Below, piece after piece: positions 61,018 through 64,000 of a DNA stretch of 64,000 bases. Location of the stretch: contig CATNEN010000007.1 of NCBI GenBank assembly GCA_950097015.1, positions 8,494,001 to 8,558,000 of the forward strand, given 5' to 3'. Both the position numbers and the translations under genes were made by a program. Source of the DNA: Macrostomum hystrix. Its lineage: Eukaryota > Animalia > Platyhelminthes. Numbering within the stretch: the first letter of the stretch is position 1; each line of letters begins with the position of its first letter. The notes below the pieces were generated by a model that saw only the letters and a list, made by a program, of their open reading frames with translations, was not told where the DNA came from and did no database searches.

Positions 61018-62097
61018 ATGCTGGGTGACCTTCGCAGCCACCGTGACATCGTCAGAATAATTGGAGCTGCGGCAGCAGAGGAGTCGAATGGACCGAATGG
61101 GCCGAGTGCCAACCGCTTTGACCCGCCTTTGACGTTCAACGATGCCATGGTGCTTAACAGCAGCACAAATTCGAAGAAGACCGGAGAAAAAGACAAGTGG
61201 GCCAGTAACGTTTTCAGCGCGTGGGTGACTGCCCGATTCCCCCAACTTCCAACAACAGTGGGTGAACTGAGCCACGACCAACTGCGTGAGTTGCTGCCGC
61301 TCTTTTTTCACGAAGTGTGCAAACAAAATGGAGAGCGCTATCCTGCTGGGTCGCTCGTCTCTCTCGCGGCTGGACTACAGCGTGGTGCGAGTAGCTCCAG
61401 TAGTCGACCTCCGGTCGACTTTTTTCGTAGTCCCGACATTAAAATGATTACGGAGTCCATTGATGCTGCAATAAATATTTCTACGAAGGAAGGAAACGAC
61501 TTAAAGCGCAAGAGTGCTGAACCAATTTCTTTAGACGAGGAGGCTCAACTCTGGGAGCAACAACTAGGTGACAAAACACCTGACCAACTGACTCGAACCC
61601 TGTTCTATCTCAACAGTCTACATTTTGCGCTACGGGGCCGCGATGAGCATTGTAATCTCACTGTGGAATTTCGTGTGGAAATCAGGGGCGGTTCCGAGTG
61701 CTTAATTTACCAAGAAAGAAACTCTAAGACCTTTACTGGAGGCCTGAAGGACAAGCGTGTTACTCCCAAAGAGGTTGTACACTTCCCTGACGTGGCTGAC
61801 CCCAGCCGCAATCATGTTGCACTCTTCAAGAAGTTTATTAGCGTGCGCCCGGCCGACATCAGTCGGTTCTACCTACAGGGGATTCGCAATCCTAGTGCGA
61901 AATGCTAATATACCAAGCGTCCACTTGGTAAGAACACCCTGTCGACCATGGTGAAACGTCTGTGTGAGGAGTCCGGCATTCAGGGTAACAAACGCAATCA
62001 CAGCCTGCGAGCCACGAGACTGTACCGCGCTGGAGTCGATGAGCAACTTATCATGGAGACAAATGGTCCCAGAAGCATCGTCGGCGTGCGTCAGTAC
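61018..62097 (+). pseudogene. Crypton-like (DUF3504-type) tyrosine recombinase 2, in-frame stop at 61906-61908, truncated by the LTR insertion
   Basis: LHFALRGRDEH, ERNSKT..GGL, *YTKRPLGKNTL, NHSLRAT, RLYRAGVDEQLIME..G.RS..GVRQY. Confidence 0.85.
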
Positions 62098-62393
62098 TGT
62101 AGCGACTTTTGGTTACGCGATTTGTTTGTACTTGCTCTGATTGTGTCCCTCTTTTCTAAATCGCTGCAACCCCCTCCTTCCCCCTGCCCCTGCTACTCTC
62201 CACGGCTGTACCCCAACCCCCCTTTCGTCTCTTTCCTTCGTCTGCCTATGTACATCTGAGGCGGGGTTTAACCCTATCCCTACTATCGATCGCTTCTCTC
62301 CAGCCGCTAGTGTTTAAGTTCAAATATAACGTCTGGCCCTCTGGGCCTTTGTGAGTCATCCCCCATTGCGCTCTCTGTCTCGGTTGAGGTTTG

Positions 62394-62438
62394 GCCGTAA
62401 AGACGGTGTCTTACTGCGAAGACTCAATTTATTGCATG
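62394..62438 (+). other. Flatworm spliced-leader exon-like sequence inside the LTR
   Basis: GCCGTAAAGACGGTGTCTTACTGCGAAGACTCAATTTATTGCATG. It has the 5' CCGT/ACGG hairpin, TTAC and terminal TTGCATG typical of flatworm SLs. It differs by one base from the Macrostomum lignano SL as I recall it. Confidence 0.8.
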
Positions 62439-63062
62439 GCTTCAACTCGCTTCGCTTCGTAAATCGTTATCACTTGAAGTAAAGACATGGCGCACGAACG
62501 AAAATAAATAAGCCCTCTAGAAAAGTAAGTCGTCTGTCAGTCGTCTTCTCATCGATTCGGTCGAAGTTGCCGGCGGCCTCGCTCGCCTCTTCGTATGCTG
62601 CCGGTCTCGCTCGCTTCTTCATCTGCCTGCCGGCTTCGTTCGCTCTACCGTCTACTGGCTCACGCCTGCCGGCCTCGCTCGCTCCCTCGAATACCGGCTG
62701 GTGTCTGTCTCCCTATTTCGTGACTGTCTCATCAATTAACTGAACTGTCGAGATAAGTAATAATAGATTTTACTGATCGCAATCCTATATTTATCATCTG
62801 TACTCGCTGGCGTTATTTTTACGTGTTTTCTCGTTATCTTGTAACTCAAACGTGTGCTTTTTTCTCTCTTATTGTTATTTTGTTCTTCACGCATCTTCTC
62901 AAAGCTAAAATTATTCTGTTGCTTTCTCTGTCCTTTGAGTCTTTCTCTGCCTTTTTTTCTTCGCCACTTCTTCTGGTCTTGCTGTATCCGCTTGCGGCAT
63001 CCGTTGCGCTCTTCTCCTTGGGGTTCCGATCTTAGCCAGACTCACTTTCGCCAAGGTGGTCA

Positions 63063-63969
63063 ATGGATGAAGCCATCAGAAAGAGAGCGGCCATTCGGTC
63101 CGTTGTGACAAAGACCATAAATTGAGCAGAGAAGTGGCTGTCAGCTGGAAGTGGACGTGATGACAAAATAAACGCTGAAGCTGAAGCATGCATTGATACT
63201 CTGAAGCAGAAACTGGGATTGATGGAGGAATTGGACCTGGACATTCAGAGTCAGATGGAAGAGGAAAAGCTGAGTCGTGAACAAGAAGAAGCTGATGAGT
63301 ATGCCTTCAGGTGTCGGAAGTACGTCAGATTGTTAGAGAAATAATTATCAAATGCGACTAAGTCTGTGACATCTGGACCTCAGGTCAAACTGCCGAAACG
63401 TCATATCACTAAATTTGACGGAACGGTGACGTCATGGCTAACGTATTGGGATCAGTTCTCCTCGTCAATCGTTTCGAATAATCAGCTATCGGACATCGAC
63501 AAGTTTAATTACCCTTTGGGATTCGCTCTCTGAATCAGCCAAGTCCTGCATTCGTAGACTGAGTGTTACTTCAGCTAATTACAAGGTAGCCATCGATCTT
63601 CTAGATCAACGCTTTGGTAAATCAGATCTGGTAATTCTAATGAACCAACTGTCAGATATTCACCTATCAGATGTGTCATTAGCAGGCTTACGTTCGTTTC
63701 ACGATGACATAGCTGCTGCCGTTCGAAGCTTGGAAGTTCAGGGAGTAATTTCGTCGGCTTATGAGGCATTACTGTTGCCTAATCTGCTTCGTAAGTGTCC
63801 AAGTGAATTTCGTCTTGACCTGATGAAGTGCGCGAGCCTGTCGAAGAAAGAAATCAACAACATGGCTGTTCTGCTGGAGTTTCTACAGACGGAAATTCAA
63901 GTTCGAGAGAACGCAGCAGTGGGCGGTAAGAAATCGAGCAACTCAAAAGCTGTAGTCGACATTGCCTAA
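63063..63969 (+). pseudogene. BEL/Pao gag (DUF1759-like), with stops and a frameshift
   Basis: MDEAIRKRAAIRS.., VKLPKRHITKFDG..SWLTYWDQF, LSDIDKFNY, NYKVAIDLL.QRFG, LRSFHD...VRSL. Confidence 0.85.
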
Positions 63970-64000
63970 GTCTTCGCTTACAACGTTAACCGTGCAGTCC

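What the first reader, a model, noticed from the sequence alone, without database searches (positions are those of the whole stretch)
62098..62500. Spliced-leader exon built into the LTR of a BEL/Pao retrotransposon
Seen: 62394-62438, GCCGTAAAGACGGTGTCTTACTGCGAAGACTCAATTTATTGCATG, lies in sense orientation 49 nt before the LTR end and PBS, roughly where R/U5 would be. It forms two hairpins (CCGT/ACGG and GTCTT/AAGAC). It is followed by GC rather than a GT donor, no U-rich Sm site is visible, and its ATG opens only MASTRFAS-stop. Known: flatworm SLs have this 5' hairpin and end in ATG. From memory it is one base from the M. lignano SL, and SL-like LTR sequences have been noted in some nematode BEL elements; both need verifying. 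Inference: the element hard-codes the host leader so that its RNA mimics a trans-spliced mRNA (cap, translation, or escape from silencing). It may have been acquired by reverse transcription of a trans-spliced genome or by capture of an SL RNA gene, and solo LTRs would scatter SL-headed promoters.
Basis: partly seen in the sequence, partly recalled or inferred. Interest (0 to 1): 0.9.

Follow-up and report, generated by a model that had tools for sequence, protein, structure and literature searches.

The report
Spliced-leader relic inside a retrotransposon LTR
A dead BEL/Pao jumping gene of the flatworm Macrostomum hystrix carries a DNA copy of the worm's own 45-nt spliced leader in both terminal repeats; this is most likely a heritable scar of a trans-spliced element RNA that was reverse-transcribed, not a proven disguise as host mRNA.

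Summary
Window 62394-62438 is the host spliced-leader (SL) exon with one changed base. It lies 49 nt before the end of a 390-bp BEL/Pao LTR, with no donor site, no Sm site and no SL-gene promoter.

- **Host SL genes.** The genome is the M. hystrix assembly. Its real SL RNA genes sit in the rDNA repeat.
- **The G variant.** It is a private mutation. This element's own 3' LTR has the exact SL.
- **This copy is dead.** It is old and broken: the LTRs differ at 3% of aligned bases, the reading frame shifts several times, and the integrase end is missing.
- **Spread.** The SL block is in every LTR of the family. It is also in a non-coding partner family with the same PBS and PPT, and in an unrelated Ty3/gypsy lineage.
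- **Origin.** Homology stops exactly at the exon ends, so the block came from a spliced RNA 5' end, not from an SL gene.
- **Against exact mimicry.** The recently active subfamily has 7 of 45 SL bases changed. The TATA/initiator spacing predicts a start 36 nt upstream of the SL.
- **For some function.** The block is a conserved island across diverged gypsy LTRs.
- **RNA data.** The available runs gave no verdict on the transcription start.

This scan has already found the same phenomenon on other DNA of this genome. A 2025 paper briefly notes similar loci in parasitic flatworms.

The parts
61018..62097 (+). Crypton-type tyrosine-recombinase-like ORFs (DUF3504, then a Phage_integrase-like C-terminus) that the BEL/Pao element interrupted. 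The coding frame runs straight into the LTR start.
   Evidence: Pfam: DUF3504 E=1.7e-15; Phage_integrase E=2.5e-5, below the curated cut-off. ORF list.
62093..62097 (.). 5-bp target-site duplication AGTAC. Its partner directly follows the 3' LTR, outside the window at C7:8561476-8561480.
   Evidence: Flanks printed.
62098..62487 (+). 5' LTR (390 bp, TGT...ACA) of a BEL/Pao element. The matching 3' LTR is at C7:8561106-8561475, beyond the window end.
   Evidence: At least 25 genomic copies, many in pairs. Alignment. The LTR pair of this element has 11 substitutions in 370 aligned bases plus 20 gap columns.
62322..62329 (+). TATA-like box AAATATAA, conserved as AAATAT in every aligned family A LTR and as AAATATAA in all but one (L010).
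   Evidence: Read from the sequence; function not tested.
62356..62358 (+). Initiator-like TCA, with its A 33 nt after the TATAA. This is the predicted transcription start, 36 nt upstream of the SL block.
   Evidence: Spacing read. Family C has the same TATA-to-TCA geometry, but there the TCA ends 2 nt before SL base 1. Prediction only.
62394..62438 (+). SL block: a DNA copy of the complete 45-nt host spliced-leader exon, with 44 of 45 bases identical.
   Evidence: M. lignano SL in PMC8629364.
62408..62408 (+). Private C-to-G change at SL position 15. It is absent from this element's 3' LTR and from all other copies.
62436..62462 (+). Short upstream ORF opened by the SL's ATG (MASTRFAS-stop).
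62439..62487 (+). 49-nt tail of the LTR after the SL block (rest of R and/or U5), ending AGTAAAGACA.
62488..62500 (+). Primer-binding site TGGCGCACGAACG, one base off the family's TGGCGCCCGAACG. Families A, B and C share the same PBS.
   Evidence: The primer tRNA gene was not identified.
62501..64000 (+). Leader and broken gag region of the element, which runs off the window. The whole element is about 5.4 kb, against 7.2 kb for intact-looking sister copies.
   Evidence: 94.7% identity to sister copy L034. The polyprotein matches in five pieces that change frame four times, and the last ~620 aa are missing. DUF1759 remnant at 63640-63966, E=6e-4.

Best explanation
The block is a heritable relic of a trans-spliced RNA 5' end that has become part of the LTR's transcribed R/leader region.

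Inferred origin: an RNA of an ancestral element received the host SL by trans-splicing. The tRNA-primed minus-strand strong-stop cDNA copied it up to SL base 1. A non-standard first-strand transfer then fixed the block between U3 and the remainder of R-U5. From that point every replication cycle regenerated it in both LTRs.

Inferred present role: the block is transcribed as part of the 5' leader and of the 3' R, and lies in the stretch where strand transfer and template switching occur. Its exact identity to the host SL is not needed, so it drifts in active lineages.

The window copy is an old, broken element. Its G at 62408 arose after insertion.

Shown: exon-only homology; presence in both LTRs and in all copies; presence in two superfamilies; decay in the young subfamily; the private mutation.
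Inferred: the trans-splicing event, the transfer step, and the position of R.
For: 1. The real SL RNA genes lie in the 11.6-kb rDNA repeat, next to a U1 gene. They have a GTAAGA donor, an unpaired AUAUUUUUAG Sm-like site and a three-hairpin fold with z = -4.3. The LTR matches only the 45-nt exon, with nothing upstream or downstream.
2. The element's own 3' LTR has the exact SL, and a 5-bp TSD (AGTAC) flanks both ends.
3. Of 56 genome matches with up to 3 mismatches, 17 are rDNA SL genes. A further 31 lie in three verified LTR families, 4 in LTR-like repeats, and 4 elsewhere.
4. Family A is BEL/Pao and family B is Ty3/gypsy. Their LTRs share only the SL.
5. Family C is a 2.15-kb non-coding element with the same PBS, PPT and LTR termini as A. 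It has a TATA box 33 nt before SL base 1, and its LTR ends 13-17 nt after the SL.
6. Young A copies and typical C copies share an identical derived first 19 nt of the SL, although their U3 regions do not align. That 19-mer has 49 genome hits, none at an SL RNA gene. This fits template switching between co-packaged RNAs within R.
7. Within families the SL changes faster than U3. In A it is 7/45 against 18/276 (p = 0.06). In C it is 7/45 against 5/295 (p = 2e-4).
8. The SL's ATG has become ATA in several lineages (family B, L048, L049, and family C copies including L046). Selection against an upstream AUG in a transcribed leader would explain this.
9. A published note proposes the same origin for SL-like loci in LTR and LINE elements of parasitic flatworms (PMC12582326).
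Against: - No RNA evidence. The transcription start, the poly(A) site and therefore R are not mapped.
- A simple strong-stop model leaves the SL complement as an unpaired 3' flap, so fixation needs a rare illegitimate transfer that is not demonstrated.
- In family A the predicted start is 36 nt upstream of the SL, so the block is not at the predicted RNA 5' end there.
- Across the diverged gypsy lineage the SL is far better conserved (87-91%) than its flanks (37-73%). A pure relic would not predict this; it points to some function.
- All 7 changes in the young A subfamily fall outside the two small stems (p = 0.034, uncorrected). One old copy shows a compensatory-looking C3-G12 to T3-A12 change.
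Confidence: 0.6

Rival explanations
1. Functional mimicry. The element hard-codes the host leader so that its RNA looks like a trans-spliced mRNA. This would gain translation, stability or escape from silencing, and the block would be kept by selection.
For: - The SL block is a conserved island in the gypsy lineage B/L049/L044: 87-91% identity against 37-73% in the flanks, p = 1e-3 to 4e-10.
- It is the only alignable LTR part between families A and C besides the termini.
- It was captured or kept in two superfamilies.
- In family C the predicted start coincides with SL base 1 within about 3 nt.
Against: - The recently active A subfamily and typical C copies are only 84% identical to the invariant host SL.
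- The ATG is lost in several lineages.
- In family A the predicted start is 36 nt upstream of the block.
- Without an Sm site the transcript would not be expected to receive the trimethylguanosine cap of true SL RNA (established knowledge).
- The gypsy conservation could also come from an RNA-structure or strand-transfer role.
Confidence: 0.2
2. DNA-level promoter element. The SL sequence would act in the LTR as an intragenic or initiator-proximal promoter element. This follows the reported requirement for the 22-nt SL as an internal promoter element of the Ascaris SL RNA gene (own knowledge, not checked here).
For: - The block sits next to TATA-like motifs in families B and C.
- It is conserved in the gypsy lineage.
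Against: - The distance from the TATA-like motif to the block differs widely: about 70 nt in A, about 33 nt in C and about 13 nt in B.
- U3 has no similarity to the SL gene's upstream region.
- The sequence drifts in active lineages.
- No evidence that flatworm SL genes use an internal promoter.
Confidence: 0.07
3. DNA-level capture of an SL RNA gene or pseudogene by recombination or insertion next to it.
For: An isolated match to the SL intron half exists outside the rDNA, at C1:16047948. SL gene fragments therefore do move.
Against: - In all LTR families homology ends exactly at SL base 1 and at the exon's last base.
- No donor site, intron, Sm site or promoter is present.
Confidence: 0.03

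Closest known systems
SL-like loci associated with LTR and LINE elements in parasitic flatworms (PMC12582326, Mol Biol Evol 2025)
   Same: Leader-only sequence without SL RNA features, lying in retrotransposons. The authors propose integration of retrotransposon transcripts that had received the SL by trans-splicing.
   Different: That paper gives one paragraph about 597 discarded loci with 'partial leader sequences' and no anatomy. Here a complete 45-nt SL sits at a fixed place in both LTRs and is inherited through many cycles. It occurs in BEL/Pao, in its non-coding partner and in Ty3/gypsy, in a free-living macrostomid.
Relict spliced leaders in dinoflagellate retrogenes (PMC5585692, PMC6050394; identified by title and abstract only)
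   Same: A DNA copy of a trans-spliced leader marks a sequence that passed through a spliced RNA and reverse transcription.
   Different: Those are host retrogenes, where the relic sits at the 5' end of a retrocopy. Here it is inside the terminal repeat of an autonomous retroelement and is propagated by the element itself.
Cer1 (Ty3/gypsy) of C. elegans (PMC3315495)
   Same: An LTR retrotransposon whose RNA is a substrate for SL trans-splicing.
   Different: In Cer1 only the spliced 2.4-kb mRNA receives SL1. The 8-kb genomic RNA does not, and no SL is encoded in the LTR.
R region of retroviral and LTR-retrotransposon LTRs (textbook reverse-transcription model)
   Same: A short repeat present at both RNA ends that mediates minus-strand transfer. 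It tolerates sequence drift and is a site of inter-template exchange.
   Different: That the SL block is R, or part of it, is inferred here and not mapped. Its origin from a host snRNA exon is unusual for an R region.

Membership tests
BEL/Pao LTR retrotransposon | Terminal repeats TG...CA flanked by a target-site duplication | tested here: met
   LTRs at 62098-62487 and C7:8561106-8561475, with a 5-bp TSD AGTAC on both sides.
BEL/Pao LTR retrotransposon | PBS directly after the 5' LTR and a polypurine tract directly before the 3' LTR | tested here: met
   TGGCGCACGAACG at 62488. GGGGGAG lies before the 3' LTR. The primer tRNA gene was not found.
BEL/Pao LTR retrotransposon | Polyprotein with DUF1759 gag-like domain, RT, Pao peptidase A17 and integrase with DUF5641 | tested here: met
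   Sister copy L034, a 1777-aa ORF: Peptidase_A17 6e-47, DUF1759 7e-31, DUF5641 2e-13, Integrase_H2C2 and RVT_1. The window copy is 94.7% identical but frame-shifted and lacks the integrase end.
SL RNA gene | GT splice donor directly after the leader | tested here: not met
   GC follows at 62439-62440. The true genes have GTAAGA.
SL RNA gene | Intron half with an Sm-binding site and terminal hairpins | tested here: not met
   The intron half has 19 genome matches, none in an LTR. LTR homology ends at the exon.
SL RNA gene | Tandem, rDNA-linked genomic organisation with its own upstream region | tested here: not met
   True genes lie in the 11.6-kb rDNA unit beside U1. U3 shares nothing with that upstream region.
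SL relic of a reverse-transcribed trans-spliced RNA | Homology limited to the exon, starting at SL base 1 and ending at its last base, in sense with the transcript | tested here: met
   Families A, B, C and four further repeats all begin at SL base 1 and end at base 44/45.
SL relic of a reverse-transcribed trans-spliced RNA | The relic marks the 5' end of the retro-copied RNA | tested here: inconclusive
   Promoter geometry puts the start at the SL in family C but 36 nt upstream in family A. No RNA data.
   The young A subfamily, with 100% identical LTR pairs, has 7 of 45 changes. Typical C copies also have 7 of 45. The gypsy lineage does keep 87-91%.
   The only runs holding the sequence are contigs of unrecorded type.

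The most novel reading that the evidence does not exclude
The SL block is a selected module and not a passive scar. LTR retrotransposons of two superfamilies in Macrostomum would have captured the host leader from trans-spliced RNA independently. They would keep it as the start of R and the 5' leader, where it serves strand transfer and/or host-like translation. Because the block is shared, it would also let an autonomous BEL/Pao element and its non-coding partner exchange R segments.
Probability: 0.25. Interest if true: 0.8.

Novelty: new variant of a known kind. Interest (0 to 1): 0.5.

Why it matters
If the block is only a scar, it still shows that LTR-retrotransposon genomic RNAs are trans-spliced in flatworms. 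It also shows that reverse transcription can write a host snRNA exon into a terminal repeat and then propagate it for many cycles. That gives a natural marker for RNA 5' ends and for template switching.

If the block is functional, it would be a case of transposons from two superfamilies converging on the host's universal mRNA leader.

There is a practical consequence as well. These LTRs create about a hundred or more SL look-alikes: 39 dispersed matches with up to 3 mismatches plus 49 hits of the derived variant. They can be mistaken for SL RNA genes or for trans-splice sites when Macrostomum genomes are annotated.

Tried and rejected
- **RNA evidence.** These run from the PPT through the LTR into the PBS and leader. 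The unique flank is uncovered, and the 31-mers in the SL region are only about 5 times deeper than the LTR. This fits low-coverage DNA as well as RNA. No verdict on transcription, start or poly(A) site.
- **Shared breakpoint as a U3/R marker.** Two LTR deletion derivatives both resume at 62359/62360. Both deletions join C-runs, and 62360-62364 is the only run of four or more C's on that side. The coincidence is therefore forced by microhomology. It is compatible with an R start there but does not prove one.
- **Hairpins as a signal.** The fold is not better than shuffles. The stem-sparing pattern in the young subfamily (p = 0.034) is not seen in other families, several of which break the stems.
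- **A second host SL variant as the source of the shared 'ATGA..G' version.** Rejected. No intron-bearing SL gene carries it.
- **Primer tRNA.** ARAGORN found no tRNA in two loci that match the PBS complement.
- **Further genomic context for four other SL-bearing repeats.** Their LTR status rests on similarity to family B (L049), a PBS-like motif (L048) or shared junction motifs only.
The plain pattern was used instead.
- **Rfam** has no family matching this SL RNA at gathering score.
No supporting paper found.

Full report
**1. The observation**

The 45-mer is at window 62394-62438 on the + strand. It occurs once in the window and never in 100 shuffles.

The window is C7:8494001-8558000 of a 220,453,370-bp assembly in 42 contigs. 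These figures equal those published for Macrostomum hystrix (PMC10468722).

The surrounding repeat is a 390-bp LTR (62098-62487, TGT...ACA). A primer-binding site follows at 62488, and the LTR is flanked by the 5-bp duplication AGTAC. The partner LTR lies 5 kb downstream, beyond the window end.

**2. The host's real SL**

Exact copies of the SL exon recur every 11.6 kb on contigs C15, C17 and C42. One unit holds 18S, 5.8S and 28S rRNA, a U1 snRNA gene and, just downstream of it, the SL RNA gene.

There the exon is followed by GTAAGA. An unpaired AUAUUUUUAG and a terminal hairpin come next. The 110-nt RNA folds into the usual three-hairpin shape (-34.7 kcal/mol, z = -4.3).

The published 35-nt M. 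lignano SL equals positions 11-45 of this exon (PMC8629364). The window copy differs from the host exon only at position 15 (G at 62408).

**3. What the LTR shares with the SL gene**

It shares only the exon. BLAST of the LTR against the rDNA unit matches 49 nt, made up of the 45 exon bases plus chance neighbours.

The bases before SL base 1 and after its last base are unrelated to the gene's flanks. No donor, Sm site or intron hairpin is present. The intron half of the SL RNA has 19 matches in the genome, none in an LTR.

The block therefore derives from a spliced leader at an RNA 5' end, not from SL gene DNA.

**4. This copy**

The element's 3' LTR carries the exact host SL (C7:8561382), so the G is a mutation that arose after insertion.

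The two LTRs differ by 11 substitutions in 370 aligned bases plus 20 gap columns. Young sister copies have identical LTR pairs.

The polyprotein of an intact-looking sister copy matches this element in five pieces that change frame four times, and the last ~620 residues have no counterpart.

The element interrupted a Crypton-type tyrosine-recombinase-like ORF.

It is an old, dead copy.

**5. The family and beyond**

- **Family A (this LTR)** has at least 25 LTR copies. It is BEL/Pao: Peptidase_A17, DUF1759, DUF5641, RT and integrase zinc domain. Every copy has the SL block.
- **Family B** has 690-bp LTRs with the SL at LTR positions 334-378, and its LTR pairs are 99.3-100% identical. It is Ty3/gypsy. 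It shares nothing with family A LTRs except the SL.
- **Family C** has at least 40 LTRs and is a 2.15-kb non-coding element. Its PBS, polypurine tract and LTR termini are the same as in family A. A TATA box lies 33 nt before SL base 1, and its LTR ends 13-17 nt after the SL.

Of the 56 genome matches with up to 3 mismatches:

| Location | Matches |
|---|---|
| rDNA SL genes | 17 |
| The three LTR families A, B, C | 31 |
| Other LTR-like repeats | 4 |
| Elsewhere | 4 |

A further 49 sites carry the derived variant of the first 19 nt.

**6. Is the block conserved?**

The answer depends on the timescale.

*Within families it changes faster than U3.*

| Comparison | SL changes | U3 changes | Fisher p |
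|---|---|---|---|
| Old A versus young A | 7 of 45 | 18 of 276 | 0.06 |
| 'Perfect' C versus typical C | 7 of 45 | 5 of 295 | 2e-4 |

The young, recently mobile A subfamily is only 84% identical to the host SL. The SL's ATG has become ATA in several lineages.

*Across the diverged gypsy lineage it is a conserved island.* In B, L049 and L044 the block keeps 87-91% identity, against 37-73% in 300 nt on either side (p = 1e-3 to 4e-10).

Exact identity to the host leader is therefore not maintained, but the segment is not free of constraint either.

**7. Exchange between families**

Young A and typical C copies share the same four derived bases (positions 7, 8, 9 and 14), so their first 19 nt are identical, while their U3 regions cannot be aligned. 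A C-like copy (L046) shows an intermediate state with only positions 7 and 14 changed.

No SL RNA gene has this version.

The simplest reading is template switching within the block between co-packaged RNAs of the autonomous element and its non-coding partner. That is expected if the block lies in R. This is an inference.

**8. Where transcription starts**

This is not known.

In family A the conserved TATA-like box (62322-62329) and a TCA 33 nt further on (62356-62358) predict a start 36 nt upstream of the block. In family C the same geometry puts the start 1-3 nt before SL base 1.

Two LTR deletion derivatives resume at 62359/62360. Both join C-runs, so the coincidence is forced by microhomology.

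The only public runs holding the sequence are contigs of unrecorded type and give no verdict.

**9. Reading**

The best explanation (confidence 0.6) is a heritable relic of a trans-spliced element RNA that now forms part of R and the 5' leader.

The gypsy conservation keeps some functional role open.

A promoter-element role (0.07) and DNA-level capture of an SL gene (0.03) are less likely.

**10. Known or new**

A 2025 study of parasitic flatworms set aside 597 SL-like loci associated mainly with LTR and LINE elements and suggested the same origin (PMC12582326). It gave no anatomy.

The detailed M. lignano LTR-retrotransposon study contains neither the word 'leader' nor 'trans-splic' (PMC12801592). 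The M. lignano SL study has no occurrence of 'retrotranspos' or 'LTR' in its main text (PMC8629364).

Cer1 of C. elegans receives SL1 only on a subgenomic mRNA (PMC3315495).

Other agents of this scan reported the same phenomenon on other pieces of this genome. I re-tested the points I use here.

Noticed in passing
L031 (C17:14000-23999); also arrays on C15 and C42: The SL RNA gene is part of the 11.6-kb rDNA repeat, directly downstream of a U1 snRNA gene. The unit order is 18S, 5.8S, 28S, U1, SL. 17 exact copies are assembled.
   Followed up: partly
G000:C1:16047948-16048012: A 100% match to the intron half of the SL RNA lies outside the rDNA arrays. No SL exon match within 3 mismatches lies beside it. 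A second, 97% copy at C42:73764 also lacks an exon match.
   Followed up: no
L040 (C7:9274918), L047 (C8:2276134), L041 (C37:188178), L045 (C3:7909516): Four SL-like copies lie outside LTRs. Two are followed by what looks like coding or retrocopied sequence. One is followed by GTACAG and may be an SL pseudogene. One lies about 36 nt from a sequence that by eye looks like a tRNA gene on the opposite strand (not run through a tRNA finder).
   Followed up: no
L036 1518-1537, L064 1852-1870, window 62488-62500: The BEL/Pao family, its non-coding partner and the unrelated Ty3/gypsy family all use the same primer-binding site (TGGCGCCCGAACG...). The matching tRNA gene was not found in the two loci tested.
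   Followed up: partly
window 61018-62097: A Crypton-type tyrosine-recombinase-like gene (DUF3504 plus a weak Phage_integrase C-terminus) is cut by the BEL/Pao insertion just after ...GVRQY.
   Followed up: partly
L025-L030 (C7:5516295-5520154 and C41:1770627-1777494): Two elements carry independent U3 deletions in both of their LTRs (LTR positions 139-262 and 88-261). Each joins runs of C and removes the TATA-like box.
   Followed up: yes
L034 268-590 and 7833-8501; L035 1-539 and 7760-8301: Two young family A copies with identical LTR pairs sit inside tandem repeats. Self-match offsets are multiples of about 64 bp in L034 and about 20 bp in L035.
   Followed up: no
L033 5076-5237 and 6717-6878 (beyond the window end): A 162-bp perfect inverted repeat links the 3' part of the window element with DNA about 0.7 kb downstream of its 3' LTR.
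   Followed up: no
L039 (C3:9792961) versus typical family C LTRs: The C copy with a perfect SL reads ...GCATGCATAAG, where typical copies read ...GCATAAG. The apparent ATG-to-ATA change in family C is therefore probably a 4-nt slippage deletion between GCAT repeats.
   Followed up: partly
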